A DNA stretch of 64,000 nt from the IMG/VR virus record IMGVR_UViG_3300027985_000843, positions 1 to 64,000 of that record; one strand, written 5' to 3'. This document shows, piece after piece, positions 537-63,795 of this stretch. Every line of letters begins with the position of its first letter. Position 1 is the first letter of the stretch. Under the pieces are notes generated by a model. It made no database searches and was not told the origin of the DNA. It worked only from the letters and a program-made list of their open reading frames with translations. A program made the position numbers and the translations under genes.

Positions 537-546
537 TCTACCTATG
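537..546 (+). promoter_or_regulatory. Class III (putative late) promoter motif
   Basis: TCTACCTATG, 13 nt before ATG 560. Confidence 0.65.
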
Positions 547-559
547 CCGCCGTGATGGC

Positions 560-1309
560 ATGGAGTCGATCATCGCAAAAGCTGTCAATCGGTACCTCGT
601 GGCGAAAGTCATCAACCGCTACCTCGACCGAATTGGGAGGGCGCCCTTCCAGATGTCCATGGGCGGATGGGACGGAGTCGACCACTACTGGCCGACCTTC
701 AAGGACTTCGAGAACTGGTCCGAGAAGCGTGACCGTTGGGGCCACACCTACGAGGCCATGTACCAATACGACAGCACGAGCGAGAGCGGCTTCGGTCCCA
801 CGCTCAACCTGTTCGTCGACTTCGACGCCGCCAAGTACGTCGACACGAGCGGCAGCCAACCGATCAAGTGGGAAGCCACCTTCCACGGATCATCCAAGAA
901 GGGCACGGTTCGGAAGGTCGAGGACATCCGAGGGCTGATGGACAACCTGATCCGGGAAGCCAAGAAGGTCCGCGACAAGATCCAGGACCAGCTCAGCAGC
1001 GCAGGCGGCACCAACTGGGACACGCACTTCGATGGGTACGAGCTTTCGGCTCAGTTCCACAGCCCTCATCCTGAGAGCGAAGCCAGCATGACCGTGGTCT
1101 TCGACGAGCCCGACGAGGTCCTGTTCGGGACCAGCGGCGAGAAGGGGAATGCCCGCATCTGGTTCTCACTCGGATCCGATTACGAAGGACACTTTGGCAA
1201 GAAAGAAGTCACCAAGTCCTACAAGACCACAGGTGACGTCGAAAAGGTCCTCAAGGAAGCCGAAAAGCTCTTCGATAAGTGGTACCAGGAAGCCCAGCCG
1301 AAAGACTGA
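560..1309 (+). CDS. Hypothetical protein, putative virion-associated, with two N-terminal xV(I)NRYL motifs
   Basis: MESIIAKAVNRYLVAKVINRYL; start reassigned to 560 from class III motif spacing. Confidence 0.7.
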   Translation: MESIIAKAVNRYLVAKVINRYLDRIGRAPFQMSMGGWDGVDHYWPTFKDFENWSEKRDRWGHTYEAMYQYDSTSESGFGPTLNLFVDFDAAKYVDTSGSQPIKWEATFHGSSKKGTVRKVEDIRGLMDNLIREAKKVRDKIQDQLSSAGGTNWDTHFDGYELSAQFHSPHPESEASMTVVFDEPDEVLFGTSGEKGNARIWFSLGSDYEGHFGKKEVTKSYKTTGDVEKVLKEAEKLFDKWYQEAQPKD

Positions 1310-9966: not shown

Positions 9967-10842
9967 TCAGACCGTCGCCACCAACTCATCAGGCTGTTGA
10001 ACACCCATCCTCTCCCATCGAACCCGAAGCCCTTTACCTGGAATCCATTCCAAGTAGTGGTTCGCCACGAGCCACATGATTCGGAGGATGATTGTGACGG
10101 GGAGAGCCCCATAGCCAAGCCCCATCATCGACAGTAGAAGGCCGATGCCTGACTCCGGCAGGGAGGTCAGAAGCTCCGTGAAACTGATGGCCCCTGTGAA
10201 GCCTTGTAACAAACTTTCAATGTCCCAGGAAATCTCTGCCACATTTGCCCACACAAAAATGAAGATGGCCGCGAGAAGGGGCCTCTTCAACGTCGGCAGG
10301 TACTTGTGAAGCCACGCGTCTACCTTCTGTGCCCCGCCCTTGATCTTCTGGACGGCGGCCCAGATGCGCGGCGACTGCTTGGCGATTCGCACCATGAGGT
10401 CTGTGAGGCTCGGAGCCTTATGCTTGGCGACGAAGTAGATGCTGAGGGGAAAGGTCTCCTGGATCTTCTTGCCGAGCCATTGAATACCCTGCAACCCTGT
10501 CTTGGCGAGTTCCTTGGCTCGGGTGGCGATGATCTTGGCCTTCTCCATCAGGGACATGTTGCTCATATCTGGCAGGCCCAGAGCACGACTCAAGACTTCC
10601 CATGCCCGCCCAGGGGCGGCCTTGAACAGGTCCAGGAGCCGCTTGACGCCCCGGAGGATACCGAGGGCCGCCTCACGGTCGGAGCTGCCCTCACGGGTTT
10701 GCCAGAAGCCTTGGGCGAGGGCTTCCACACACTCCATGGGCGGGGCCCAGGACGCAGTTCGAACGCCGTGATCGGTGTACTGTTCCTCAACTGCCAAACG
10801 GATGAGGTACCGGTCCCGGACTCGTAGGGCGAGATCGCTCAT
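9967..10842 (-). CDS. Membrane protein with N-terminal RVRDRYL motif (putative late)
   Basis: MSDLALRVRDRYL; hydrophobic C-terminal helices; class III motif TTCTCTTGTC (10856-10865) 13 nt upstream. Confidence 0.7.
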   Translation of the reverse strand: MSDLALRVRDRYLIRLAVEEQYTDHGVRTASWAPPMECVEALAQGFWQTREGSSDREAALGILRGVKRLLDLFKAAPGRAWEVLSRALGLPDMSNMSLMEKAKIIATRAKELAKTGLQGIQWLGKKIQETFPLSIYFVAKHKAPSLTDLMVRIAKQSPRIWAAVQKIKGGAQKVDAWLHKYLPTLKRPLLAAIFIFVWANVAEISWDIESLLQGFTGAISFTELLTSLPESGIGLLLSMMGLGYGALPVTIILRIMWLVANHYLEWIPGKGLRVRWERMGVQQPDELVATV

Positions 10843-10855
10843 ACTTTCCGCAACA

Positions 10856-10903
10856 GACAAGAGAAAAAGCCGAACTCTGCCGGCCGGCGACCGTAGTAGA
10901 GGC
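10856..10903. promoter_or_regulatory. Divergent class III (-) and class I (+) promoters
   Basis: Minus: TTCTCTTGTC-N13-ATG(10842). Plus: CCGAAC(10870)-N16-CGTAGTA-GAGGC-ATG(10904). Confidence 0.8.
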
Positions 10904-17645: not shown

Positions 17646-17820
17646 GTCACGCCTGGAGTTCGGCCTTCTTGGGCTTCTCGAACTTCACGCCACGCTGACT
17701 GTCCTTGGCCTTGGCCGCACACGTCGAGCACAAGGGTAGGGTTCCGTTGGAGGTGGTTGCTGGGCGCTGCCCGCAACCGAAACACATCTGTCTGTCCTTC
17801 GTCGCCATACCACAGAGTCC

Positions 17821-18393
17821 TCACAAGAAGATGGACGGATCTTCGCACAGTTGCTTGAGTTGTTCAACCTTCCACGGGTCCACGTCTTCCGCCGCCGGCA
17901 ATGGGGGCATCAGGAAGGGGCCCGCCGCCCGAGCGACAACGACCTCTTGAGCTGCGGCGCCTTGGTCCGATGTGGGAAACACCAGGGTATTCTTGAGCCC
18001 GGACACCTCCAGCATGTACTTGAGGTGCTCCTCGTCCTGTTCGCTGCCCGTCGGCCACCCCTCGTCGCGAGGCCACACACGGCCGTCCCACCCGTAGCGG
18101 TCCAGGGCGGCCACGATGTTGTTGAGCGTCTCCTCGAAGACGGGCAGCTCGACTTGCAAGGTACCCCCCGGCTTCGAATCGACGGGATTTTTGGGCAGGA
18201 GCAAGACGGACAGCATCACGAGAGGTGTTTCCGTGGCCTCTCTGACCCCAATCCACCCAAAGAGGGGGAGCGACAGGAATGTTCCCTTGACCGGCTCGGA
18301 CAGAACTTTGCCCACGGGCAGCATTCGGTGATCGACGCCGGTCGCACCCGTGGGACGGGCCATCTTGTTTTTTCGCTTGTCACTGATCTTCAT
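17821..18393 (-). CDS. Hypothetical protein
   Basis: Class II motif (18405-18411) 11 nt upstream. Confidence 0.65.
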   Translation of the reverse strand: MKISDKRKNKMARPTGATGVDHRMLPVGKVLSEPVKGTFLSLPLFGWIGVREATETPLVMLSVLLLPKNPVDSKPGGTLQVELPVFEETLNNIVAALDRYGWDGRVWPRDEGWPTGSEQDEEHLKYMLEVSGLKNTLVFPTSDQGAAAQEVVVARAAGPFLMPPLPAAEDVDPWKVEQLKQLCEDPSIFL

Positions 18394-21783: not shown

Positions 21784-21819
21784 TACACCGGGTCGGGTGC
21801 CGTGGGCAATCTTCTTGTG
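21784..21819. promoter_or_regulatory. Divergent class II (-) and class III (+) promoters
   Basis: TACACCG (21784-21790) toward pyrE; TCTTCTTGTG(21810)-N13-ATG(21833). Confidence 0.7.
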
Positions 21820-21832
21820 ACTTTCCCCAAGC

Positions 21833-22489
21833 ATGGATTCCGTTGGACGCGTCATCCGCATTTTTCTGGCTACGAGAACTCACTACAAGGTGGACTTTCG
21901 CAAGCTCAGGGAAATGAACAGCCCCGCCTTCCGCCAAGAGCAGATGCGGATGGAGGGGGGCTACAACAAGTGGCGCGTTGAACTCGTCCCCATCCGAGAC
22001 ATCCGGGTGCCCAAGGTCTGGAACCCCGGCCGGTTCGACCAAGCCAAGAAGCTCATCGACAAGGGCACGCCCCTCGACCCCATCCGAGCCACGAAGGTCG
22101 GGGGTAAGTGGGAGATCGATGACGGCATCCACCGAACCAACGTGAGCATCGCCAAAGGATACACGCACGTTCCGGTTTTGGTGCCCGAGTGGGTCGCAAC
22201 CCCCGAAGCATACGAAGCTCCCGAACCAGAAAAGAAGCAACTTACCAAGGGCACATGGATCAAGCTGCGCGAGCCCTTCGACGGCCGGTCCGTCGGATGG
22301 GTGGACGAACAGCTTGGAAGCAACCAACCACGAGGCGTCCGCCGATGGCGCTATGGGCTCGCCCTCATCGGCCCCGGCGAAGACTGGCCCGACACAGGGG
22401 ACTTCTCTGATGATGAGCTGGACGTCAGATCCCCGCCTCCGTGGGCCATCGAAGCTCGTCTAAAGGCCGAAGCGGCGGGCTGGGCTTAG
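21833..22489 (+). CDS. ParB/Srx-like domain protein with N-terminal RVIRIFL motif
   Basis: LDPI...WEIDDGIHR...GYTHVPV. Confidence 0.75.
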   Translation: MDSVGRVIRIFLATRTHYKVDFRKLREMNSPAFRQEQMRMEGGYNKWRVELVPIRDIRVPKVWNPGRFDQAKKLIDKGTPLDPIRATKVGGKWEIDDGIHRTNVSIAKGYTHVPVLVPEWVATPEAYEAPEPEKKQLTKGTWIKLREPFDGRSVGWVDEQLGSNQPRGVRRWRYGLALIGPGEDWPDTGDFSDDELDVRSPPPWAIEARLKAEAAGWA

Positions 22490-40929: not shown

Positions 40930-43506
40930 TCAGACGGAGACGGGGACGTCTGCCTTGGCTTTCTCGATGTCGCGGTGCTTGAGTGCGAGCCCTCGTGCGG
41001 CTCGCACGACGTATTGCAGTGTGGCTGCGTACTTCTTGTGCACCTGCTGTTTCAACGTCTTGCTGGCTTCCGCGTCGTCGATGTATTCCTCTTCGATTTG
41101 CCCGCGAGCCATATCACAGGCGGCACAGAAAGTGATCTCTTGGTCGAAGATCTTCTGGAACACTTCGTGCAAGCCCTTGTTCCGCATCTCGTTCAAGGTG
41201 TCAGCAAACGCCTTGATGTCGCTGTTGTAGCGGACCCAGAACTTATTGCGAGTCCGGTCTGTCACGAGAAAGTAACCCTCGCTCTCGGTATCCTGGCCCC
41301 AATCCATCATCGACCAGTTCTCGTCGTTCAAACGGACAGCCTCCGGAGCGTCAGGCCGCATACCCGACAAGACCGTGGTGACGGTGGTCTCAACCGTGCG
41401 CCCACCATTGATCTTCTTTCCCTTCGGGCATGGAGTCCGTTCTCGCTGGGCCTCCACTTCCACCGTCAACGTGGCCGTGCTGATGATATCGCCATCATCC
41501 GAGTAGAGAGTCAAGAAGACCTCTCGGTACTCCCCCACCACCGCATCCTCGGGACACAGAATCCGACACTTCACCCGCTGATTCTGCATCTCTTCCCGGC
41601 TCTTCACAACGAGCCCGTTCGTGGAGACCACGATCTTGCTCTTCGGACGCATACCGCTGATGTCCCAGTATCGAGGAGTGGCGTCCGTTTCGAAGAACCA
41701 CGTGTACGACTGTCCCGGATACAGACGGACCCTGGCATTAAAGGGGTCCTTCGTCATCTCGTTGTGGATGGCCCACCTGATGAAGGTGGGCACGTCCGAA
41801 GCCTTGATCTTGTCCAGCTTCTCGGGGCCCCTCGGAATCATTCGGTGCGTGGCCACCTCGACCAGGTTGTCCGAGAGGATGCCCGCCTTCATCAGCTGGT
41901 CAGTCATCTCTTTCTCGAAACCCTTGTCCTCCTTGGTTCGAGGCGGTCGGTTGTACTCGCTATCCCACTTTGCGAGGATAGTGTCCTGCTTGAGGCAGTG
42001 TACGATCGCATTGAAGATCTCCTTCTGCACAGGAGTCGCCTTCATCCGATCTCGGGTCGACGTGAACAGCTCGTGACGCGCCATCGGATGCAGGTCATCA
42101 CAGATAACCTGCACCATCATCCACCCACCAACAGCGTAGAGACCCGCGCCTTCAGTCTGGTTGGTCAGCCAGGCCCTGGGCCCTTCGGCGTGGTTCTGCC
42201 CATCCAGGTTGAAGTGGATGGGGAGTTCCTGGTGCATGTAATTCTTCACGGCATCCTTCACGGCAGCCCGTTCAGTATCCTTGAGTTCGTTCTTTCGATC
42301 CCTCTGATCTCGTCCGATGACCCAGACCTTGATCTTGATGGTCCCCATCTTGTCAACCATGTCGTCCGGGTTGGGACCGAACCTGTGCGGGTCCAGCGTG
42401 TACTCATAGCCGTGCGAATACACGACGGTGATGCCTTCGTCGGGAGCCAACCGACTCCGGTCGAGCTGCACGAAGGCCCCCTTGACGGTGTGCGGTGTCG
42501 GATGATACGCGGCGTACTTCTTATCGGAATTCTTCTTGCCGCCGGACTGGAAACAAGCCTCCGTCCGGAAAGGCATCACGCATTCCCCGAGCATACGGTT
42601 GCCGAGAGCATAGGTGCTCTTCCGGCCGTTCCACTCCTTCGCATAGGAGTTGTCGTAGCCGATATGCCGGATGAACGTTCCGTGGGTGAAGCCCTTCGGC
42701 GCCTTCATGCGAGGGATCTTGCCATCGACCGTCATGTACAAGAAGACAGGAAGGGTCTTCGTGCTCCCGTCGGGGTTTTTCTCCCAGACCTTCTTCACGA
42801 CAGTGAACCCCACCTCATCAGAGTCGACGTGCCGAGTGGCAATGACCGTGAGTTTACTGTAGTTGAAGGTGGCAGAAGCCCCGTACCCGTGTTTACCGAT
42901 GAGATAGGGCTTCTGGGCCTTATTCCCCTTATGCAAAGAGAGAATGGTCTTAGCCATGTTGTCCGGGAGAATTCCGATTCCGTGGTCGCGGATGTCGTAG
43001 ATGCCAACATCCCATGACCGGACCAACAGATTCTTCGACACTTCCAGAAGGTGGTCATCGCAAGCCTTGTCCCGCATGGCTTCCGGAGTGACCCCGAAGT
43101 ATCGTTTGACGGCCTCAGCAGGAGACGCCGGGACAGGGTCACCCGACTTGTCCTGGTACACCTTCAGCTCGATATTGGCATCCATGCCATTCGTAAACCT
43201 CTCGGCCAGTGCTCGCCCGGCGCAAGCGTTTGAGGCAACGGCTGACTCGTTGTTGGGGTTGTCGTCGAGAGGAACCCACTTGACATTGGGATGGTGGTTG
43301 ATGAAGTAGTCCAGTCGATTGGACCCGACCTCCCATGCCGCCGCGAGTTCCTTTTCGGTGGGCTTTTTAGGCGGGGTGGTCCACTGCGGGAAAGGGTGGA
43401 TAGCGTCCACCACTGTCTTCCCCCTCGTGTTCTTCTTGGTGATCACGTGAGGGGTGGCGATGGCAGCAAACAGATCTTCGATAGTGGTGGGGTGAGTTAC
43501 GCTCAT
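40930..43506 (-). CDS. GHKL (HATPase-fold) ATPase, 858 aa
   Basis: ERFTNGMDA (ExxxNxxDA), IRDHGIGI (DxGxG), GKHGYGASA, GTFI. Confidence 0.85.
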   Translation of the reverse strand: MSVTHPTTIEDLFAAIATPHVITKKNTRGKTVVDAIHPFPQWTTPPKKPTEKELAAAWEVGSNRLDYFINHHPNVKWVPLDDNPNNESAVASNACAGRALAERFTNGMDANIELKVYQDKSGDPVPASPAEAVKRYFGVTPEAMRDKACDDHLLEVSKNLLVRSWDVGIYDIRDHGIGILPDNMAKTILSLHKGNKAQKPYLIGKHGYGASATFNYSKLTVIATRHVDSDEVGFTVVKKVWEKNPDGSTKTLPVFLYMTVDGKIPRMKAPKGFTHGTFIRHIGYDNSYAKEWNGRKSTYALGNRMLGECVMPFRTEACFQSGGKKNSDKKYAAYHPTPHTVKGAFVQLDRSRLAPDEGITVVYSHGYEYTLDPHRFGPNPDDMVDKMGTIKIKVWVIGRDQRDRKNELKDTERAAVKDAVKNYMHQELPIHFNLDGQNHAEGPRAWLTNQTEGAGLYAVGGWMMVQVICDDLHPMARHELFTSTRDRMKATPVQKEIFNAIVHCLKQDTILAKWDSEYNRPPRTKEDKGFEKEMTDQLMKAGILSDNLVEVATHRMIPRGPEKLDKIKASDVPTFIRWAIHNEMTKDPFNARVRLYPGQSYTWFFETDATPRYWDISGMRPKSKIVVSTNGLVVKSREEMQNQRVKCRILCPEDAVVGEYREVFLTLYSDDGDIISTATLTVEVEAQRERTPCPKGKKINGGRTVETTVTTVLSGMRPDAPEAVRLNDENWSMMDWGQDTESEGYFLVTDRTRNKFWVRYNSDIKAFADTLNEMRNKGLHEVFQKIFDQEITFCAACDMARGQIEEEYIDDAEASKTLKQQVHKKYAATLQYVVRAARGLALKHRDIEKAKADVPVSV

Positions 43507-43544
43507 GGTATGTGCCTCTCTGGGCGTGCCAGCCCAGTAAAGGG

Positions 43545-43596
43545 GCCGCCGGACAGGCGGCCATCCTCAGTTACTGCCGCCGGACAGGCGGCCATC
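43545..43596. repeat. Two identical 21-bp direct repeats, each a hairpin
   Basis: GCCGCCGGACAGGCGGCCATC at 43545-43565 and 43576-43596; stem GCCGCC/GGCGGC. Confidence 0.9.
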
Positions 43597-43602
43597 TCTC
43601 TA

Positions 43603-43639
43603 TACACCGGTACTACGTCCGTCCGGTCAACAAGTTCGG
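43603..43639 (-). promoter_or_regulatory. Tandem class I plus class II promoters
   Basis: CCGAAC-N16-CGTAGTA-c-CGGTGTA on minus strand, upstream of the GHKL gene. Confidence 0.8.
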
Positions 43640-43644
43640 AAAAA

Positions 43645-44199
43645 TTATGTCTTGGTCTTCCACAGGACTTCTCTGACCCGCTCCTCCACGTCGCCGCAGT
43701 CCAGCGGCAGCGTCAGGAAGCTTCTGGGGCAAAATCTGTCCAGCAGCCCCGTCAGGACGATCTCGTAGATGTCGTGGTAGGTCCGCTCCTGGATACGGTG
43801 CGAGTCCCCGCTCGTGTCACAGAAGCTGTTGACGGAGAAGAAGAAGACGTGTGTGTACCGACCCATGCCGACCTCCACCTGACTGAGGAGGTCTTCATCC
43901 ACGGCCGAGATGTCATGGAGGACCGTGTAGCACAGGTTGTCGACGGTAGTTCGGTCCGAGACGAAGGCTTCGCGGGTGGTCTCCCAAGCCATCTTCTCGG
44001 TCACCAGACGTTTTTGGAACTCAGCCCGCTTACCCGCCTTGTCGACGTCGTACGGGTTCTCGAAGCCCATGCTACGGGCCACGGTTCTGCTGCCCACTGG
44101 ATTGAGGGGGAGCCCGAGGATGTCTGAGATACGTTTGGCGACGGTGGTTTTGCCGGTACCGGAGGCTCCGGCGAATGCGATTCTGACAGGGGTTTTCAT
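43645..44199 (-). CDS. AAA_28/NadR-Ttd14-like nucleotide kinase
   Basis: IAFAGASGTGKTT, FVSDRT.VD; class II motif (44210-44216) 10 nt upstream. Confidence 0.82.
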   Translation of the reverse strand: MKTPVRIAFAGASGTGKTTVAKRISDILGLPLNPVGSRTVARSMGFENPYDVDKAGKRAEFQKRLVTEKMAWETTREAFVSDRTTVDNLCYTVLHDISAVDEDLLSQVEVGMGRYTHVFFFSVNSFCDTSGDSHRIQERTYHDIYEIVLTGLLDRFCPRSFLTLPLDCGDVEERVREVLWKTKT

Positions 44200-44226
44200 G
44201 CCCCCAACATACACCGGACAGCTAGA

Positions 44227-44712
44227 TCAGCTGTGCTCTTCGTCGTAGTTGTACAAGGCGGCGATCAGCTCGTCCTTGCTCATGTTCGACCGGCCAGAGA
44301 TGCTGCGAGCCCTCGCTTCGGCGTACAGTTCCTTGGTGTCCCACTCTTCGTAGGGGGGCAGCTCTGGTTCGGGTTCAGGTTCTGGCTCCGTGACCTCGGG
44401 CTCCACAACTTCTGGTTCGGGCTCAGGCACCACCACGGGCTCGACGACCACGACCGGTTCCACAACCACGACGGGCTCGGGAGCAGGGCCGGGGGGCGCC
44501 TTGCCCGCTCGTTGGGCGAGAGCTTCCTCTACGAGATACAAGAGGTGCTGCGTCGAGCCCTTCCGAACACCGTCAGGGGCCTTGTTGGTCCGCGTCTCCG
44601 CCATGAGCTGAACGATCATGGTGGCTTCGTGGGCGATGATGTGCCCATACCCGACGGCCCGGATGCAGCGGCTCCGCAAGGTCTTGAGGTCGGCGTCGGT
44701 GTAGTTATCCAT
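44227..44712 (-). CDS. Protein with Rho N-terminal-like domain
   Basis: PE/VVEP-rich linker; YEEWDTKELYAEARARSISGRSNMSKDELIAAL. Confidence 0.8.
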   Translation of the reverse strand: MDNYTDADLKTLRSRCIRAVGYGHIIAHEATMIVQLMAETRTNKAPDGVRKGSTQHLLYLVEEALAQRAGKAPPGPAPEPVVVVEPVVVVEPVVVPEPEPEVVEPEVTEPEPEPEPELPPYEEWDTKELYAEARARSISGRSNMSKDELIAALYNYDEEHS

Positions 44713-44756
44713 GGTGGTCTCCTGTTGTCTGCTACCAGAAGACCACCATAAGTAGA
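44711..44756 (-). promoter_or_regulatory. Class III promoter overlapping an RBS-sequestering hairpin
   Basis: TCTACTTATG; stem ATGGTGGTCTTCTG/CAGGAGACCACCAT (14 bp, one G-U) covers AGGAG and the AUG. Confidence 0.75.
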
Positions 44757-44759
44757 TGA

Positions 44760-45515
44760 TCAATCCACGGATTCAGCCTTGCCGGCTGGAACCAAGGCAG
44801 ACCGCTCGTCGGCCTTGACAACAGGTTGGGAGGGCGGCCCGTTCTGAAGGGCTGCCTGGACGAGCTTCGAGATGCCAGCGTCCGTGAACGTCCGCTGAGG
44901 GGCCGAGTTGTGGAACCATCTGATAGCAGTGCCCATCCTCGCGGTGCTCCCCTCGGCTCCGGCTGTGCACTTGCCCGACGCGTAGACGCGCAACCGTTGA
45001 TCCAAAGGAAGGCCCATCCCATTGCAGGAAGAGAACGAGACCCTCAGCACCTTGAGCCCCTCGGCGATGCACTTCTTGCGGTCGTCCACCAACTCTTGGC
45101 CTGTGTACCCATCGGAGATGTCCGCCGGGTCATCCCCCCATCTGGGCAGACGATCGTGAGCGGTGTTCCATTTGAGGGTCCGACCACTTCCCACGTTGAT
45201 CTGCATCAGGCACCACGAGTTGCCCTTGTCGCCCCTCGCGTACTTGCCCACACCATAGTCGACGTTCTTCATGAACCCCGACTCGTGCAGCATGATCGAC
45301 AGAATGACAGAGACTGTCCGACTCCGACCATTGTCGCCTCGGAACAAGGGTTTGACCGACGGGTCGTAGACAACCTCGACGACGTCTTCTGCAATGCTCT
45401 TGTAGCGGGCTGTGGCCTCTACCTCTGTCTCTTGGGCTTCCTCATAGAAGGTCGTGCGGCCCGGCGGGGCTACGGCCACCATGAAGGCTAGAATCCAAGC
45501 AATAACAGGTTCCAT
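44760..45515 (-). CDS. Secreted lysozyme-fold/lytic transglycosylase-like protein
   Basis: Signal peptide; HESGF...GDKGNSWCLMQI...YASG; AAGGAG SD; class II motif at 45644-45650. Confidence 0.7.
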   Translation of the reverse strand: MEPVIAWILAFMVAVAPPGRTTFYEEAQETEVEATARYKSIAEDVVEVVYDPSVKPLFRGDNGRSRTVSVILSIMLHESGFMKNVDYGVGKYARGDKGNSWCLMQINVGSGRTLKWNTAHDRLPRWGDDPADISDGYTGQELVDDRKKCIAEGLKVLRVSFSSCNGMGLPLDQRLRVYASGKCTAGAEGSTARMGTAIRWFHNSAPQRTFTDAGISKLVQAALQNGPPSQPVVKADERSALVPAGKAESVD

Positions 45516-45593
45516 GACTTTCTCCTTGGAAGGGGACGTTACTAGAGGCCCGCTCAGCGTGCAAGTTTTTGAGCCTTGGTGTATGTAGCAGGT

Positions 45594-46055
45594 ATGCACC
45601 CACTTTCGTTGCACCATGGCCTTCTAGGTCGTGACCCCAAACATACACCGGAGAGTTATCAAGTCACTCCCCGCCAAAATAAGCTGTATTCTCTCTATCC
45701 CAAGGTCCATGGCATCGCCCAAACAGAGCAGAGCCACGAGGACTTTCTCGCAACCCTCATTCTGCTTCTGGTTCAGACTGACTACCAGAAAGCTCGGCAT
45801 GTTCTGCTATTCACCCCAAAGGCCATGCGGCCGTGGGTCGTGCAGCAAGTGGCAGAGGTGTTTCGGTATACCGTCCGGTGCCGAAAGGGCGACAAGGCCA
45901 ACCTGAAGATTCTCAAGGACGTGTTCGAGCAGATCTCCCTCAGCCACCAATTCCTCCAGGTGCCCAAAGAGCCTGACTACTGGGTGGCCTTCGGCCTAGG
46001 GCGCAACGCCGCCCTCCCCCAATGGCTCAACGCAGGACTGACAGATGACCTCTGA
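45594..46055 (+). CDS. Hypothetical protein
   Basis: TGGTGTA(45577)-N10-ATG. Confidence 0.6.
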   Translation: MHPLSLHHGLLGRDPKHTPESYQVTPRQNKLYSLYPKVHGIAQTEQSHEDFLATLILLLVQTDYQKARHVLLFTPKAMRPWVVQQVAEVFRYTVRCRKGDKANLKILKDVFEQISLSHQFLQVPKEPDYWVAFGLGRNAALPQWLNAGLTDDL

Positions 46056-46593
46056 CGACGGGTTCGACCTGGAGTCCGATTGGCAGCTGGTTCGGCCCCA
46101 GCCCCAAGCCACACCCCGGCCGGACATCTTCCAACGGACTCTCGCGGAGGCCCAGCAACGGGCCTTGGCCCGTATCAGCGAAAAGTACCAGGGGAAGGCA
46201 GCCACCGACGGATACCTCGTCGACAGCGTCCAGATCTTCATGGATGAGTGGTTCCAGTGCCTCCGCAGTCAGGACAGGGCGGGCCTCGTGGAAGCCATCA
46301 TCGAGGGGCAGAACATGTCATCCTCGGAGATACGAGGATTCGTCCGAGCCCTGCCCATGACCTTTCTCGTCAGGGTGTCTGAGGCGGCCCTCTCCGGGGC
46401 CAAGGGCATTCACGCTCTGCTTTCGGTGGAGTGCAACCGGCGGACAGGAGTGGTTCGGGACTACGAAATCAAGAGGATCGGTGATCGCATTCGCGTAGAT
46501 GTCTTCACGGGCGACCAAAAGACGTTTCACTTTTTCCTCGATGATGACTTTCAAGTAGACAACACCGACACAGATGATTCAGCCAACCCCTGA
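46045..46593 (+). CDS. Hypothetical protein with N-terminal DLExDWxxxRPQP motif
   Basis: MTSDDGFDLESDWQLVRPQP. Confidence 0.65.
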   Translation: MTSDDGFDLESDWQLVRPQPQATPRPDIFQRTLAEAQQRALARISEKYQGKAATDGYLVDSVQIFMDEWFQCLRSQDRAGLVEAIIEGQNMSSSEIRGFVRALPMTFLVRVSEAALSGAKGIHALLSVECNRRTGVVRDYEIKRIGDRIRVDVFTGDQKTFHFFLDDDFQVDNTDTDDSANP

Positions 46594-47248
46594 CAACCCT
46601 GTGCTGGTTTTCCAGCATGCCCACGCGGAAGTCCTGGACCACTTCCAAGCCCAAGGCGCCTACGGTCGCGAGGGCTGGCTCAGCATCGGAGCTGTCGAGA
46701 ACTTCGTTTTCCACGCCAGTCGGCTGAACGGTAACTGGGGTGTCGTATGGGGGCTCCTCGACACGGAGTACCTCGTGCTCGATGAGCCCCTTCGATCCAT
46801 GGTCGATTCGGGCAAGTACATCGACCTCTTCAGAGCCATATGGGAAGTCCGCTTCCAGCTCAGTGAGGGCGCCGACGTGCGACGTCTCGTCGATGATATC
46901 GCCCAGTGGCTCAACACAGGGGACCCCTGCCCACAACTCGGACTCGGGCAGCTCACCCAACAGCAACAACTCGACAACCTCCTGTTCCTACTCACCCTCG
47001 CTGCTCAGAACGAGCTGGTTCGGCCAGCCATGTTCGTCTACGCACGTATTGACCGGGCCGCTGAACAAGAAGACAAGGTGTTCAAAAAACGCCTTCTAAA
47101 CGGCTTACTTACCCTCATTAAGCTTATTGAACGCTGGGCCCCTTTGGGGAGTCCAGCATCTTTGCTGCTGAGCCTCTCTGACACGCACAAGCTCGATAGC
47201 CGCCTGCGAGCCAAGATCGAGTCTCTTCTTGTGCCCCCGGAAGTGTGA
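46574..47248 (+). CDS. Hypothetical protein
   Basis: 224-aa ORF in operon. Confidence 0.65.
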   Translation: MIQPTPDNPVLVFQHAHAEVLDHFQAQGAYGREGWLSIGAVENFVFHASRLNGNWGVVWGLLDTEYLVLDEPLRSMVDSGKYIDLFRAIWEVRFQLSEGADVRRLVDDIAQWLNTGDPCPQLGLGQLTQQQQLDNLLFLLTLAAQNELVRPAMFVYARIDRAAEQEDKVFKKRLLNGLLTLIKLIERWAPLGSPASLLLSLSDTHKLDSRLRAKIESLLVPPEV

Positions 47249-55603: not shown

Positions 55604-56208
55604 TCTTCCTCGCCCTCGTCCATCAGCTCAAAGGCTGCGTCTTGAAGAGCTTCGTCCAGCTTCCTCGCCGCTGGGCCAGTCTTGCTCGCCACGTACTTCG
55701 ACAGGTCGCGAATGGTGAATCGAGGATCCACGAACAGCACGTCCCAGTCACCATCCCATGTGCCCACGCCCGCTCCCTGGTGTTCCATGTAGTACAGGAA
55801 GCCGGCGCCGCCGCGCAGGTCCATCATCACCTCGACCACGTGCTCTGGCTTCTTGGCACTGCGGAGAGGGCCGACGCCCATCTTGAACAGGCCGATGTTC
55901 TTCTTCACCCAGTCGAGGAGCGCCTTCTCCACGGTCTTCTCGTAGGCTTCGGCGGCGGCCTCCACCTCATGAGGGACATCGGGGCTCCGAGCATCGCCGC
56001 CAACGGACATGACCTCTGTCTCCAGCAGACCCGTGAGCGTAGCGTTGTCAGACAGCTTGGCCGTTCGATCCAACTTGCCTTCGACCATGTAGGCGAGACG
56101 GATGAGGTTGCGGGCGACAGCTTTCCGGCTCGTGGGCTGACTGCGCTGGAAGGCGAGCATGCGAGCAAGTTGGCCCTGAACCTCGTCGATAGAAGCGACT
56201 TTGTGCAT
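55600..56208 (-). CDS. Putative late protein with MHKVAS leader
   Basis: N-terminus similar to 63363-63761; class III-like TCTGTTTATG (56233-56242) and GAGG SD. Confidence 0.7.
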   Translation of the reverse strand: MHKVASIDEVQGQLARMLAFQRSQPTSRKAVARNLIRLAYMVEGKLDRTAKLSDNATLTGLLETEVMSVGGDARSPDVPHEVEAAAEAYEKTVEKALLDWVKKNIGLFKMGVGPLRSAKKPEHVVEVMMDLRGGAGFLYYMEHQGAGVGTWDGDWDVLFVDPRFTIRDLSKYVASKTGPAARKLDEALQDAAFELMDEGEED

Positions 56209-63362: not shown

Positions 63363-63761
63363 CTAGCGAGCTGCCTTGTCGATTCGCTCTTCGGCTCCCT
63401 TGCTAGGAGCTTGCGGCATTGTCGTGCGGAGACGCTCGCCTGCCCACTTGGCTAGGAGCTGGAAGTCCGTGTAACCATCGAGACCATGCTTATCAGCAGC
63501 CCGACCGAGCCAGTAGTCTGCCGGCTTCTCCCGGTCGTCGCCCATCATCTTGATAGCTTCCGATCGAATCTTCTGGAACAGCTGCTTGTACTTCGCCTTG
63601 GGAAGTTGACCCCCGGCACCTGCAACCCGATCGGCGATGTCCCGCAGCTTACCTGCTAGGACGTCGCGGTCGGGCTTGCCGCCGGGGCCGTGGCCCTGGA
63701 TGAAGGCCATCAGGGAGCGGAGTTCCGCTTGCAGCTCCTGGGGAGACGCGATCTTCTGCAT
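63363..63761 (-). CDS. Putative late protein with MQKIAS leader
   Basis: TCTTCCTATG-N13-ATG; N-terminus similar to 55600-56208. Confidence 0.7.
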   Translation of the reverse strand: MQKIASPQELQAELRSLMAFIQGHGPGGKPDRDVLAGKLRDIADRVAGAGGQLPKAKYKQLFQKIRSEAIKMMGDDREKPADYWLGRAADKHGLDGYTDFQLLAKWAGERLRTTMPQAPSKGAEERIDKAAR

Positions 63762-63774
63762 AGCCATGGTACGG

Positions 63775-63795
63775 CATAGGAAGATCCTCGGTGTA
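63775..63795. promoter_or_regulatory. Divergent class III (-) and class II (+) promoters
   Basis: CATAGGAAGA-tcct-CGGTGTA-N10-ATG(63806). Confidence 0.8.

What the first reader, a model, noticed from the sequence alone, without database searches (positions are those of the whole stretch)
44711..44756. RBS-occluding hairpin whose 5' arm overlaps the class III promoter (T4-style translational timing switch)
Seen on the minus strand: ATGGTGGTCTTCTG-N11-CAGGAGACCACCAT forms 14 bp that bury AGGAG and the AUG of the Rho-N gene. The 5' arm starts inside the TCTACTTATG box. Read-through mRNA from the class II promoter at 45650 would fold and be silent, while a transcript starting downstream of the class III box lacks most of the arm. 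Established: T4 genes e and soc and I-TevI use this logic. It supports class III being a promoter and implies the Rho-N protein must be held back until late.
Basis: partly seen in the sequence, partly recalled or inferred. Interest (0 to 1): 0.68.

Follow-up and report, generated by a model that had tools for sequence, protein, structure and literature searches.

The report
Promoter-embedded hairpin hiding a ribosome site
In an uncultured giant phage, a strong RNA hairpin hides the ribosome-binding site of one gene on read-through messages. A conserved promoter-like box sits in the hairpin's first arm and is predicted to start a shorter message that lacks the arm, the same logic phage T4 uses for its lysozyme gene, though no transcript start has been mapped here.

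Summary
On the minus strand, 44749-44736 pairs with 44724-44711 (14 bp, 16 with two extra G-U pairs; -25.7 kcal/mol, z -4.3) and buries AGGAG and the AUG of the 161-aa gene.

The window is the first 64 kb of a 372-kb virus record from a hydrothermal-vent metagenome.

The "class III box" is real. It is kept at the same place in related metagenomic phages. A matrix built only from relatives ranks this site 7th best in the genome.

Many box copies are followed at exactly 17-18 nt by start codons without a Shine-Dalgarno sequence. That points to a transcript start about 17 nt after the T of TAT, here 44733, inside the hairpin loop. Such a transcript lacks the whole 5' arm. The predicted cost of opening the ribosome site falls from 12-18 to 2.6 kcal/mol.

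Relatives keep an SD-burying helix next to the box while the loop varies from 11 to 92 nt. A second locus (172.6 kb) has the same design.

Not shown: any mapped transcript start, promoter activity, or that class III is "late". Formal covariation is absent.

Verdict: a likely new example of the T4 e/soc/I-TevI logic, using a different promoter type.

The parts
44743..44762 (-). Class III promoter-like box. The core TCTACTTATG is 44756-44747 and the T of TAT is 44750.
   Evidence: A matrix trained only on relatives' other locus scores this 20-mer 14.5 bits, 7th best in the genome. CTACTTATG is kept at the orthologous site in L001, L004, L011 and L007.
44736..44751 (-). 5' arm of the hairpin: 14 nt at 44749-44736, plus two U-G extension pairs.
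   Evidence: It overlaps the box and lies wholly upstream of the inferred transcript start.
44725..44735 (-). Hairpin loop (11 nt). It contains the inferred class III transcript start at 44733 (A) or 44732.
   Evidence: The T+17/18 spacing of leaderless class III genes, applied to T = 44750. This is inference, not mapping.
44709..44724 (-). 3' arm of the hairpin. It carries the Shine-Dalgarno AGGAG (44723-44719) and the start codon (44712-44710).
   Evidence: The start agrees with the N-termini of homologues.
44227..44712 (-). 161-aa gene with an N-terminal domain, a Pro/Glu/Val-rich linker and a C-terminal Rho_N/SAP-like helix-extended-helix motif.
   Evidence: Pfam Rho_N at E 0.0012, below the cut-off. 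There are three homologues, one carrying Rho_N and one SAP in precomputed hits.
44760..45515 (-). Upstream 251-aa gene of unknown family. It supplies the read-through transcripts. Its stop TGA (44762-44760) lies 8 nt before the helix.
   Evidence: It is 61% identical to L001:3952-4860. No Pfam, NCBIfam or PDB match.
45643..45650 (-).
   Evidence: The motif is enriched upstream of genes.
44209..44215 (-). Class B promoter GGTGTAT for the next gene (a P-loop kinase-like protein whose leaderless ATG is at 44199). It marks the end of the unit served by the hairpin.

Best explanation
The hairpin is a translational insulator built around an internal promoter.

Long transcripts start at the GGTGTATG promoter at 45650 and run through the 251-aa gene. 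They contain both arms, fold, and hide the SD and AUG of the 161-aa gene, so little protein is made from them.

The conserved box at 44756-44747 is a third promoter class of this phage lineage. Its transcripts start about 17 nt after the T of TAT, at about 44733 in the loop. They carry only the 3' arm, leave the ribosome site open, and are translated.

Expression of the 161-aa protein therefore follows the class III promoter and not upstream transcription.

Shown: the structure, its rarity, the conservation of the box and of the SD-burying helix, and the fixed spacing of leaderless genes from the box.

Inferred: promoter activity, the start position, read-through, and the effect on translation.
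For: Structure
- 16-bp helix, -25.7 kcal/mol, z -4.3.
- Rare in the genome and sitting on a ribosome site.
- Opening energy ranks 7th of 467 genes.

The box
- CT.YTTATR occurs 10 times in the genome, 8 of them oriented within 90 nt upstream of a gene start.
- It is the only recognisable promoter motif I saw before the head-of-unit genes at 56208 and 218018.
- The same box follows the stop of the orthologous upstream gene in L001, L004, L011 and L007.
- A pyrimidine-rich CTT[A/G]T box lies 17-35 nt before a conserved 450-aa structural gene in about 40 distinct huge-phage contigs of 38-64% GC.

Start position
- A matrix trained on relatives finds 119 sites in this genome. The offset of ATG codons downstream of them peaks at T+17 (12 sites) and T+18 (6 sites), against about 2 at other offsets. 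Those ATGs open long ORFs without an SD.
- In relatives L143 and L145 the structural gene starts at T+17. In L005 the homologue of the 161-aa gene starts at T+18 of a box that abuts the upstream stop.
- No relative has its AUG closer than T+17.

The switch
- Window: opening energy 12.3-18.2 kcal/mol for long leaders against 2.6 from T+17.
- L007: 14.0-14.8 against 4.2. L001: 17.5-18.9 against 6.5. L011: 12.2-14.6 against 3.5.
- The 5' arm ends at T+14 (window), T+19 (L001, L007) and T+18 (L025). It stays next to the box while the loop is 11, 26 or 88-92 nt.
- AGGAG:CUUCU in the window becomes AGGAAG:CUUCCU in relatives, a one-base-pair insertion present in both arms.

Second instance
- At 172608 (minus strand), a 10-bp helix joins the box to the SD. 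The opening energy is 11-16 kcal/mol long against 4.8 short.
- Across 43 relatives of that locus the native upstream part occludes the ribosome site more than shuffled versions do (12.2 against 9.0 kcal/mol, Wilcoxon 4e-5).

Other
- The U-G pairs work only on the sense-strand RNA.
- The phage encodes at least two sigma-like proteins that could read extra promoter classes.
Against: - No transcript 5' ends, no RNA data and no cultured relative. Promoter activity and the T+17 start are inferences from sequence statistics.
- Formal covariation is not above column-shuffle controls, because both arms are sequence-constrained. Only two distinct stem versions exist at the orthologous locus.
- The box is pyrimidine-rich and so naturally complementary to an SD. 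Part of the pairing could be a by-product.
- Only about half of the SD-led class III sites in this genome show strong occlusion.
- In the relatives' loci the T+17/18 peak is weak.
- Timing of class III is unknown.
- Gene calls come from my own crude caller.
Confidence: 0.6

Rival explanations
1. The hairpin acts mainly at the transcript level. It would be a U-tract-less terminator or processing/stability element that ends or cuts the message of the upstream 251-aa gene. Ribosome-site occlusion would be secondary.
For: It begins 8 nt after the upstream stop codon. Other long perfect hairpins in this genome also lack a T run, for example 362356-362393.
Against: There is no T run after the stem, and the terminator scan does not report it. 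The 3' arm is the SD plus the AUG of the next gene, which a plain terminator does not need. In L001-type relatives the arms are about 90 nt apart, which is unlike a terminator. The position of the arm tracks the box.
Confidence: 0.13
2. The hairpin is a constitutive translational attenuator or operator present in all transcripts. This would require the box not to be a promoter, or its start to lie upstream of the arm. The structure would be opened by ribosomes finishing the upstream gene (coupling), by a leaderless mini-ORF (MVVFW, 44749-44732), or by a trans-acting protein.
For: In distant relatives the two genes abut or overlap, which suggests ancestral coupling (L009, L018). The ATG in the box opens short ORFs that cross the 5' arm in the window, L001 and L007. 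If the start were at the G of TATG the site would stay closed (14.2 kcal/mol).
Against: The upstream stop is 8 nt or more before the helix base and 25 nt or more before the SD-pairing part. A terminating ribosome would therefore melt at most a pair or two. That footprint is taken from established knowledge and was not tested here. The mini-ORF is not conserved in length, frame or sequence, and it has no SD. The fixed T+17/18 spacing of leaderless genes argues that transcripts start downstream of the arm.
Confidence: 0.12
3. The pairing is a by-product. The pyrimidine-rich box is complementary to any strong SD, and CCATGG at the start is self-complementary, so the helix is not itself selected.
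For: The box consensus is CT-rich. There is no covariation beyond column composition. Several class III sites have no strong helix.
Against: Box:SD complementarity plus UAUGG:CCAUG accounts for only about 10 of the 16 pairs. The middle UGGU:ACCA pairs are extra. A 16-bp helix is expected 1.4 times per genome, and about 0.006 times on a ribosome site (own arithmetic). In L001 and L007 the SD-pairing arm is not the box at all, yet the helix is kept across loops of 26-92 nt.
Confidence: 0.1
4. It is a DNA-level inverted repeat, bound by a dimeric regulator that represses the class III promoter.
For: The repeat spans roughly -1 to +41 relative to the T of the box's TAT, that is, across the inferred start at T+17.
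Against: The arms pair through U-G wobbles, which would be A-C mismatches on the other strand. Fourteen-nt arms and a spacer that varies from 11 to 92 nt in relatives are unlike operators.
Confidence: 0.03

Closest known systems
Phage T4 gene e (lysozyme) leader: a late promoter inside a hairpin that sequesters the ribosome site
   Same: Long transcripts from upstream promoters fold a helix over the SD and AUG. A promoter lies in the DNA that encodes the 5' strand, so its transcripts lack that strand and are translated (PMC3014915, section 29). Related phages likewise keep a promoter in the 5'-strand region.
   Different: The promoter here is not TATAAATA read by gp55. It is a pyrimidine-rich CTT[A/G]T box with its start about 17 nt downstream, in an uncultured 59% GC huge phage. 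The regulated gene is not a lysozyme. Nothing has been mapped or measured here.
Phage T4 soc, gene 49 and intron-encoded I-TevI
   Same: They use the same sequestration logic for genes embedded in earlier transcription units (PMC3014915, section 29).
   Different: I-TevI sits in a group I intron, where delayed translation protects splicing. No intron or comparable rationale is visible here.
Leaderless mRNAs (a 5'-terminal AUG translated only when it is at the 5' end)
   Same: In the same lineage, L005 places the homologous gene's AUG at T+18 of the box with no SD. That also ties translation to the gene's own promoter. The hairpin version and the leaderless version look like two solutions to one problem.
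   Different: The window's gene has a 21-nt leader with a canonical SD and needs the hairpin to silence read-through copies.
Long-range ribosome-site occlusion with translational coupling (RNA coliphages MS2 and Q-beta)
   Same: A ribosome site is closed by pairing with upstream sequence.
   Different: In those phages, opening depends on ribosomes translating the upstream cistron. Here the upstream stop lies before the helix and the arm tracks a promoter box.

Membership tests
T4-type promoter-embedded hairpin that sequesters a ribosome site (e, soc, 49, I-TevI) | The SD and/or AUG is paired in transcripts that come from upstream | tested here: met
   Predicted 16-bp helix over AGGAG and the AUG. 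Opening energy is 12-18 kcal/mol in contexts of 100-300 nt. This is prediction only.
T4-type promoter-embedded hairpin that sequesters a ribosome site (e, soc, 49, I-TevI) | [quoted passage not shown] | tested here: inconclusive
   The box overlaps the arm. It is conserved, orientation-specific, stands at heads of units, and ranks 7th genome-wide with an independent matrix. Promoter activity was not measured.
T4-type promoter-embedded hairpin that sequesters a ribosome site (e, soc, 49, I-TevI) | That promoter's transcript start lies within or after the 5' strand, so short transcripts cannot fold | tested here: inconclusive
   The start is inferred at T+17/18 from leaderless genes. That gives 44733, in the loop, with an opening energy of 2.6 kcal/mol. 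No 5'-end data exist.
T4-type promoter-embedded hairpin that sequesters a ribosome site (e, soc, 49, I-TevI) | Read-through transcripts from an earlier promoter actually reach the gene | not testable with these tools
   GGTGTATG lies at 45650 and no terminator-like site was found between it and the hairpin. No RNA data.
T4-type promoter-embedded hairpin that sequesters a ribosome site (e, soc, 49, I-TevI) | The internal promoter belongs to a later temporal class | tested here: inconclusive
   Class III makes up 5 of 9 recognisable promoters in the 100-225 kb structural block, where class A is absent. It precedes head and baseplate-like genes. It also drives genes in other regions.
Intrinsic (factor-independent) terminator | A G+C-rich stem followed by a run of U | tested here: not met
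   GGAUAACUAC follows the stem, and the scan does not report it.
Rho_N (PF07498) domain protein | A score above the Pfam gathering threshold | tested here: not met
   19.2 bits against a cut-off of 24.9, at residues 126-154. Homologue P0002 carries a faint Rho_N hit and P0003 a weak SAP hit. Best described as a Rho_N/SAP-like C-terminal motif.

The most novel reading that the evidence does not exclude
The class III box may be a dual-use element across a whole clade of huge phages. As DNA it would be a promoter. When transcribed by read-through it would act as a built-in anti-Shine-Dalgarno, since it resembles the 3' end of 16S rRNA. Every internal class III gene would then be shielded from translation on foreign transcripts. 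The lineage would switch freely between this hairpin solution and a leaderless solution for the same gene.
Probability: 0.25. Interest if true: 0.7.

Novelty: new member of a known kind. Interest (0 to 1): 0.5.

Why it matters
If correct, the T4 trick of making translation depend on which promoter made the message is not confined to T-even phages. It has arisen, or been kept, in an uncultured lineage of 200-600-kb phages that uses a different promoter type.

The work also yields a usable promoter grammar for that lineage. There are three motif classes, each with a start position inferred from leaderless genes. This could help annotate gene starts and transcription units in hundreds of huge-phage contigs that currently have almost no functional annotation.

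Finally, it gives a concrete, testable coordinate (44733 +/- 2) for any future metatranscriptome or in-vitro transcription experiment.

Tried and rejected
- Public phage records. Megablast of 43000-47000 and tblastn of the 858-aa neighbour found nothing.
- IMG/VR scans with the 161-aa and the 251-aa proteins found no relatives.
- A scan of IMG/VR for CCTAGNCTACTTATG gave 30 hits. All lie in unrelated contigs, nearly all of low GC, and are chance matches.
- Contigs of homologues P0002 and P0003 could not be fetched because the sample files are too large.
- The closest relative found through the structural gene (L092, 83% identity) lies on a 241-kb fragment that lacks the 251-aa gene.
- Sequencing runs. 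Only DNA runs hold this stretch. It could not have shown a transcript start.
- MAFFT misaligned the window's 5' arm against the relatives, so covariation at the orthologous locus was judged by eye.
- The formal count at the second locus shows 81% of cells paired, against 42-66% when slid, but no covariation above the shuffles.
- A search for a T7-like single-subunit RNA polymerase (PF00940) found nothing. The control rang nowhere either, so this says little.
- The idea that the box resembles a T7-type promoter with its start at the G of TATG was dropped, because leaderless genes sit at T+17/18 and not at the box.
- The sigma-70 and terminator consensus scan found nothing at the hairpin.
- No family or structure was found for the 251-aa protein. 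Its ES...LMQIN motif looks like a lytic transglycosylase only from memory.

Full report
**Where the window lies.** The window is the first 64 kb of a single 371,739-bp virus record (59.4% GC) that IMG/VR estimates as 78% complete. The only runs holding more than a twentieth of the sampled words are two DNA runs, one labelled hydrothermal vent metagenome, and both may be the source of this DNA. No RNA run holds it. The genome encodes DNA polymerase A, a UvrD-like helicase, a topoisomerase, a baseplate-J protein and a Gp80-like head protein, among mostly unknown genes. It has no close relative among deposited phages.

**The observation.** On the minus strand, 44749-44736 pairs with 44724-44711. 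That is 14 pairs, one of them U-G, and two further U-G pairs make 16. The loop is 11 nt.
- The 3' arm holds AGGAG (44723-44719) and the A and U of the start codon at 44712-44710.
- The 5' arm begins inside TCTACTTATG (44756-44747).
- The stretch folds at -25.7 kcal/mol, with z -4.3 and none of 200 shuffles as good. The helix survives in a 201-nt context.
- The genome has ten uninterrupted hairpins of 16 bp or more, against 1.4 in Markov-shuffled genomes. This one lies on a real ribosome site. By my arithmetic the chance expectation of that is about 0.006 per genome.
- The energy to open -14..+3 of this start is 17.0 kcal/mol, 7th of 467 called genes (median 7.8). Several of the higher-ranked starts are leaderless, where upstream sequence is not part of the mRNA.

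**Gene context** (my own codon-bias gene caller).
- A GGTGTATG motif lies at 45650-45643 on the minus strand.
- Next is a 251-aa gene (45515-44760). It has an SD and belongs to no known family.
- Then come the box and hairpin in a 47-nt spacer, followed by the 161-aa gene (44712-44227).
- Next is another GGTGTAT at 44215 with a leaderless ATG at 44199, for a P-loop kinase-like gene.
- Last is a CCGAAC...CGTAGTAC motif at 43617, before an 858-aa gene.
- No terminator-like site lies between 45650 and the hairpin.
- The 161-aa protein has a sub-threshold Rho_N hit at its C-terminus.

**Promoter grammar of the genome.** K-mer enrichment in upstream regions gives two clear classes.
- Class A is TTCCGAAC, about 15 nt, CGTAGTAC, 4 nt, then ATG.
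- Class B is GGTGTAT, 9-10 nt, then ATG.
- In both, start codons without an SD sit at a fixed distance. This is the signature of leaderless mRNAs and it locates the transcript start.
- Class B recurs in related contigs.
- The phage has at least two sigma-like genes. One scores above the NCBIfam cut-off for the sigma-70/ECF superfamily.

**Is the class III box real?**
- The exact 10-mer is unique in the window.
- The looser CT.YTTATR occurs ten times in the genome, eight of them oriented within 90 nt upstream of a gene start. That category makes up 2% of positions.
- It is the only recognisable motif I saw before the head-of-unit genes at 56208 and 218018.

Relatives give the stronger test.
- A metagenome scan with the 251-aa protein returned 36 loci.
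- In L001, L004, L011 and L007 the upstream protein is 57-61% identical, and the homologue of the 161-aa gene follows it. CTACTTATG sits right after the upstream stop codon in all four.
- A second box-plus-hairpin lies at 172608 (minus strand), before a 450-aa protein that has more than 1,300 homologues on contigs of up to 620 kb.
- In about 40 distinct relatives of 38-64% GC, a pyrimidine-rich CTT[A/G]T box lies 17-35 nt before that gene.
- A matrix built only from those relatives, excluding this genome, scores the window site 14.5 bits, 7th best of about 743,000 positions.

**Where would class III transcripts start?**
- Among 119 matrix hits in this genome, the offset from the T of T[A/G]T to the ATG codons downstream of it peaks at 17 (12 sites) and 18 (6 sites). 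Other offsets hold about two each.
- Those ATGs open ORFs of 50-420 codons and have no SD. Window examples are T543 to 560 (+), T10859 to 10842 (-) and T21816 to 21833 (+).
- In L143 and L145 the structural gene starts at T+17 of CTACTTATG. In L005 the homologue of the 161-aa gene starts at T+18 of a box that abuts the upstream stop.
- No relative has its AUG closer than T+17.
- Class III is therefore a third leaderless-type promoter whose start is at about T+17. For the finding, T is 44750 and the start is 44733, an A in the loop.

**The switch, computed.**

| Locus | Long leader (kcal/mol) | From T+17 (kcal/mol) |
|---|---|---|
| Window | 12.3-18.2 | 2.6 |
| L007 | 14.0-14.8 | 4.2 |
| L001 | 17.5-18.9 | 6.5 |
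| L011 | 12.2-14.6 | 3.5 |
| 172608 locus | 11-16 | 4.8 |

All values are the energy to open -14..+3. If the window's start were at the G of TATG, the site would stay closed at 14.2 kcal/mol.

**Conservation of the structure.**
- L001-type and L007 sequences keep an 11-bp helix (GCUUCCUGUAG with CUACAGGAAGC) over the SD.
- The loop is 88-92 nt in the L001 type and 26 nt in L007, against 11 nt in the window.
- L007 also pairs UUAUGG of the box with CCAUGG at the start, as the window does.
- The SD pairing changes from CUUCU:AGGAG to CUUCCU:AGGAAG, one extra base pair present in both arms.
- The 5' arm ends at T+14 (window), T+19 (L001, L007) and T+18 (L025). It stays next to the box and not next to the SD.
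- Across 43 relatives of the 172608 locus, the native upstream part occludes the ribosome site more than shuffled versions (12.2 against 9.0 kcal/mol; Wilcoxon 4e-5).
- Formal covariation is not above column shuffles: 81% of cells pair, against 42-66% when the partner is slid. Both arms are sequence-constrained, so covariation cannot settle the matter.

**What is not shown.**
- There is no transcript start, promoter activity, read-through or translation measurement.
- 'Late' is only suggested. Class III supplies 5 of 9 recognisable promoters in the 100-225 kb structural block, where class A is absent. It also drives genes elsewhere.
- In the more distant relatives L009 and L018 the two genes abut or overlap with no box. 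Holding this protein back is therefore not a general need.

**Rivals.**
- A terminator is unlikely. There is no U run, the arms are about 90 nt apart in relatives, and the 3' arm is the SD.
- Coupling to the upstream gene is unlikely, because its stop lies 8 nt or more before the base of the helix.
- The MVVFW mini-ORF is not conserved.
- A compositional by-product explains part of the pairing but not the central pairs, nor the relatives in which the arm is not the box.
- A DNA operator fits poorly with the U-G pairs and the variable spacer.

**Comparison with the known.** The logic is that of T4 genes e, soc, 49 and I-TevI (PMC3014915, section 29). Membership rests on a mapped start inside the helix, which cannot be tested here. 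I therefore file this as a probable new member of that kind, with a different promoter, at a confidence of about 0.6.

Noticed in passing
window 13038(+), 43617(-), 60042(+); 36 copies of CGTAGTAC genome-wide: Class A promoter: TTCCGAAC, about 15 nt, CGTAGTAC, 4 nt, then a start codon with no SD. It is ECF-sigma-like and leaderless. One copy precedes the phage's own sigma-like gene at about 283.9 kb.
   Followed up: partly
window 44215(-), 45578(+), 45650(-) and others; 103 copies of GGTGTAT genome-wide: Class B promoter: GGTGTAT(G), then a leaderless ATG 9-10 nt later. The same arrangement is present in related contigs L001, L003, L007, L008 and L011.
   Followed up: partly
window 45578-45650: Two class B promoters face each other: 45578 (+), with its ATG at 45594, and 45650 (-). 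Their transcripts would overlap by about 40 nt at the 5' ends, so antisense interference is possible.
   Followed up: no
window 538-560(+), 10842-10871(-), 17808-17837(-), 21804-21833(+), 63761-63790(-): These are further class III boxes, each with a leaderless ATG exactly 17 nt after the T of T[A/G]T. The gene at 560-1309 has a box (GATCTACCTATG) very like the one in the finding.
   Followed up: yes
G000 172577-172620(-) (L045:8577-8620): A second box-plus-SD hairpin (CUCCUUAUGG, 6 nt, CCAUGAGGAG) lies before a 450-aa protein. That protein is conserved at 44-83% identity in more than 1,300 metagenomic proteins on contigs of up to 620 kb. It is distantly similar to a 'minor tail protein' of Tunturiibacter phage Tunturi_5 and to gp175 of Bacillus phage G.
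   Followed up: yes
L005:3190-3220: In this relative the homologue of the 161-aa gene has no SD and no hairpin. Its ATG sits at T+18 of a box (GATCCTTTTAT) that abuts the upstream stop. This is a leaderless version of the same promoter-dependent translation.
   Followed up: partly
window 44743-44762(-) and class III boxes generally: The box (GATCAYCTMCTTA-like, with consensus TTCCCCTTAT in relatives) resembles the 3' end of 16S rRNA (GATCACCTCCTTA, recalled from memory). That would make it a natural anti-SD when transcribed.
   Followed up: no
G000 218309-218983(-) and about 283.0-283.9 kb(-): There are two phage-encoded sigma-like genes. The first scores above the NCBIfam cut-off for the sigma-70/ECF superfamily, and a class III box (218059) lies just downstream of it.
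   Followed up: partly
window 44732-44749(-): The ATG of the box opens a 5-codon ORF (MVVFW) across the 5' arm. In L001 it is 16 codons and in L007 it is in frame with the main gene. It is not conserved, has no SD, and is probably meaningless.
   Followed up: yes
G000 362356-362393: A perfect 17-bp palindromic hairpin without a flanking T run. It may be a bidirectional U-tract-less terminator, which bears on the terminator rival.
   Followed up: no
window 44350-44500(-): The 161-aa protein has a roughly 45-residue Pro/Glu/Val repeat linker (PVVVVE and PEPE runs) between its N-terminal domain and the C-terminal Rho_N/SAP-like motif.
   Followed up: no
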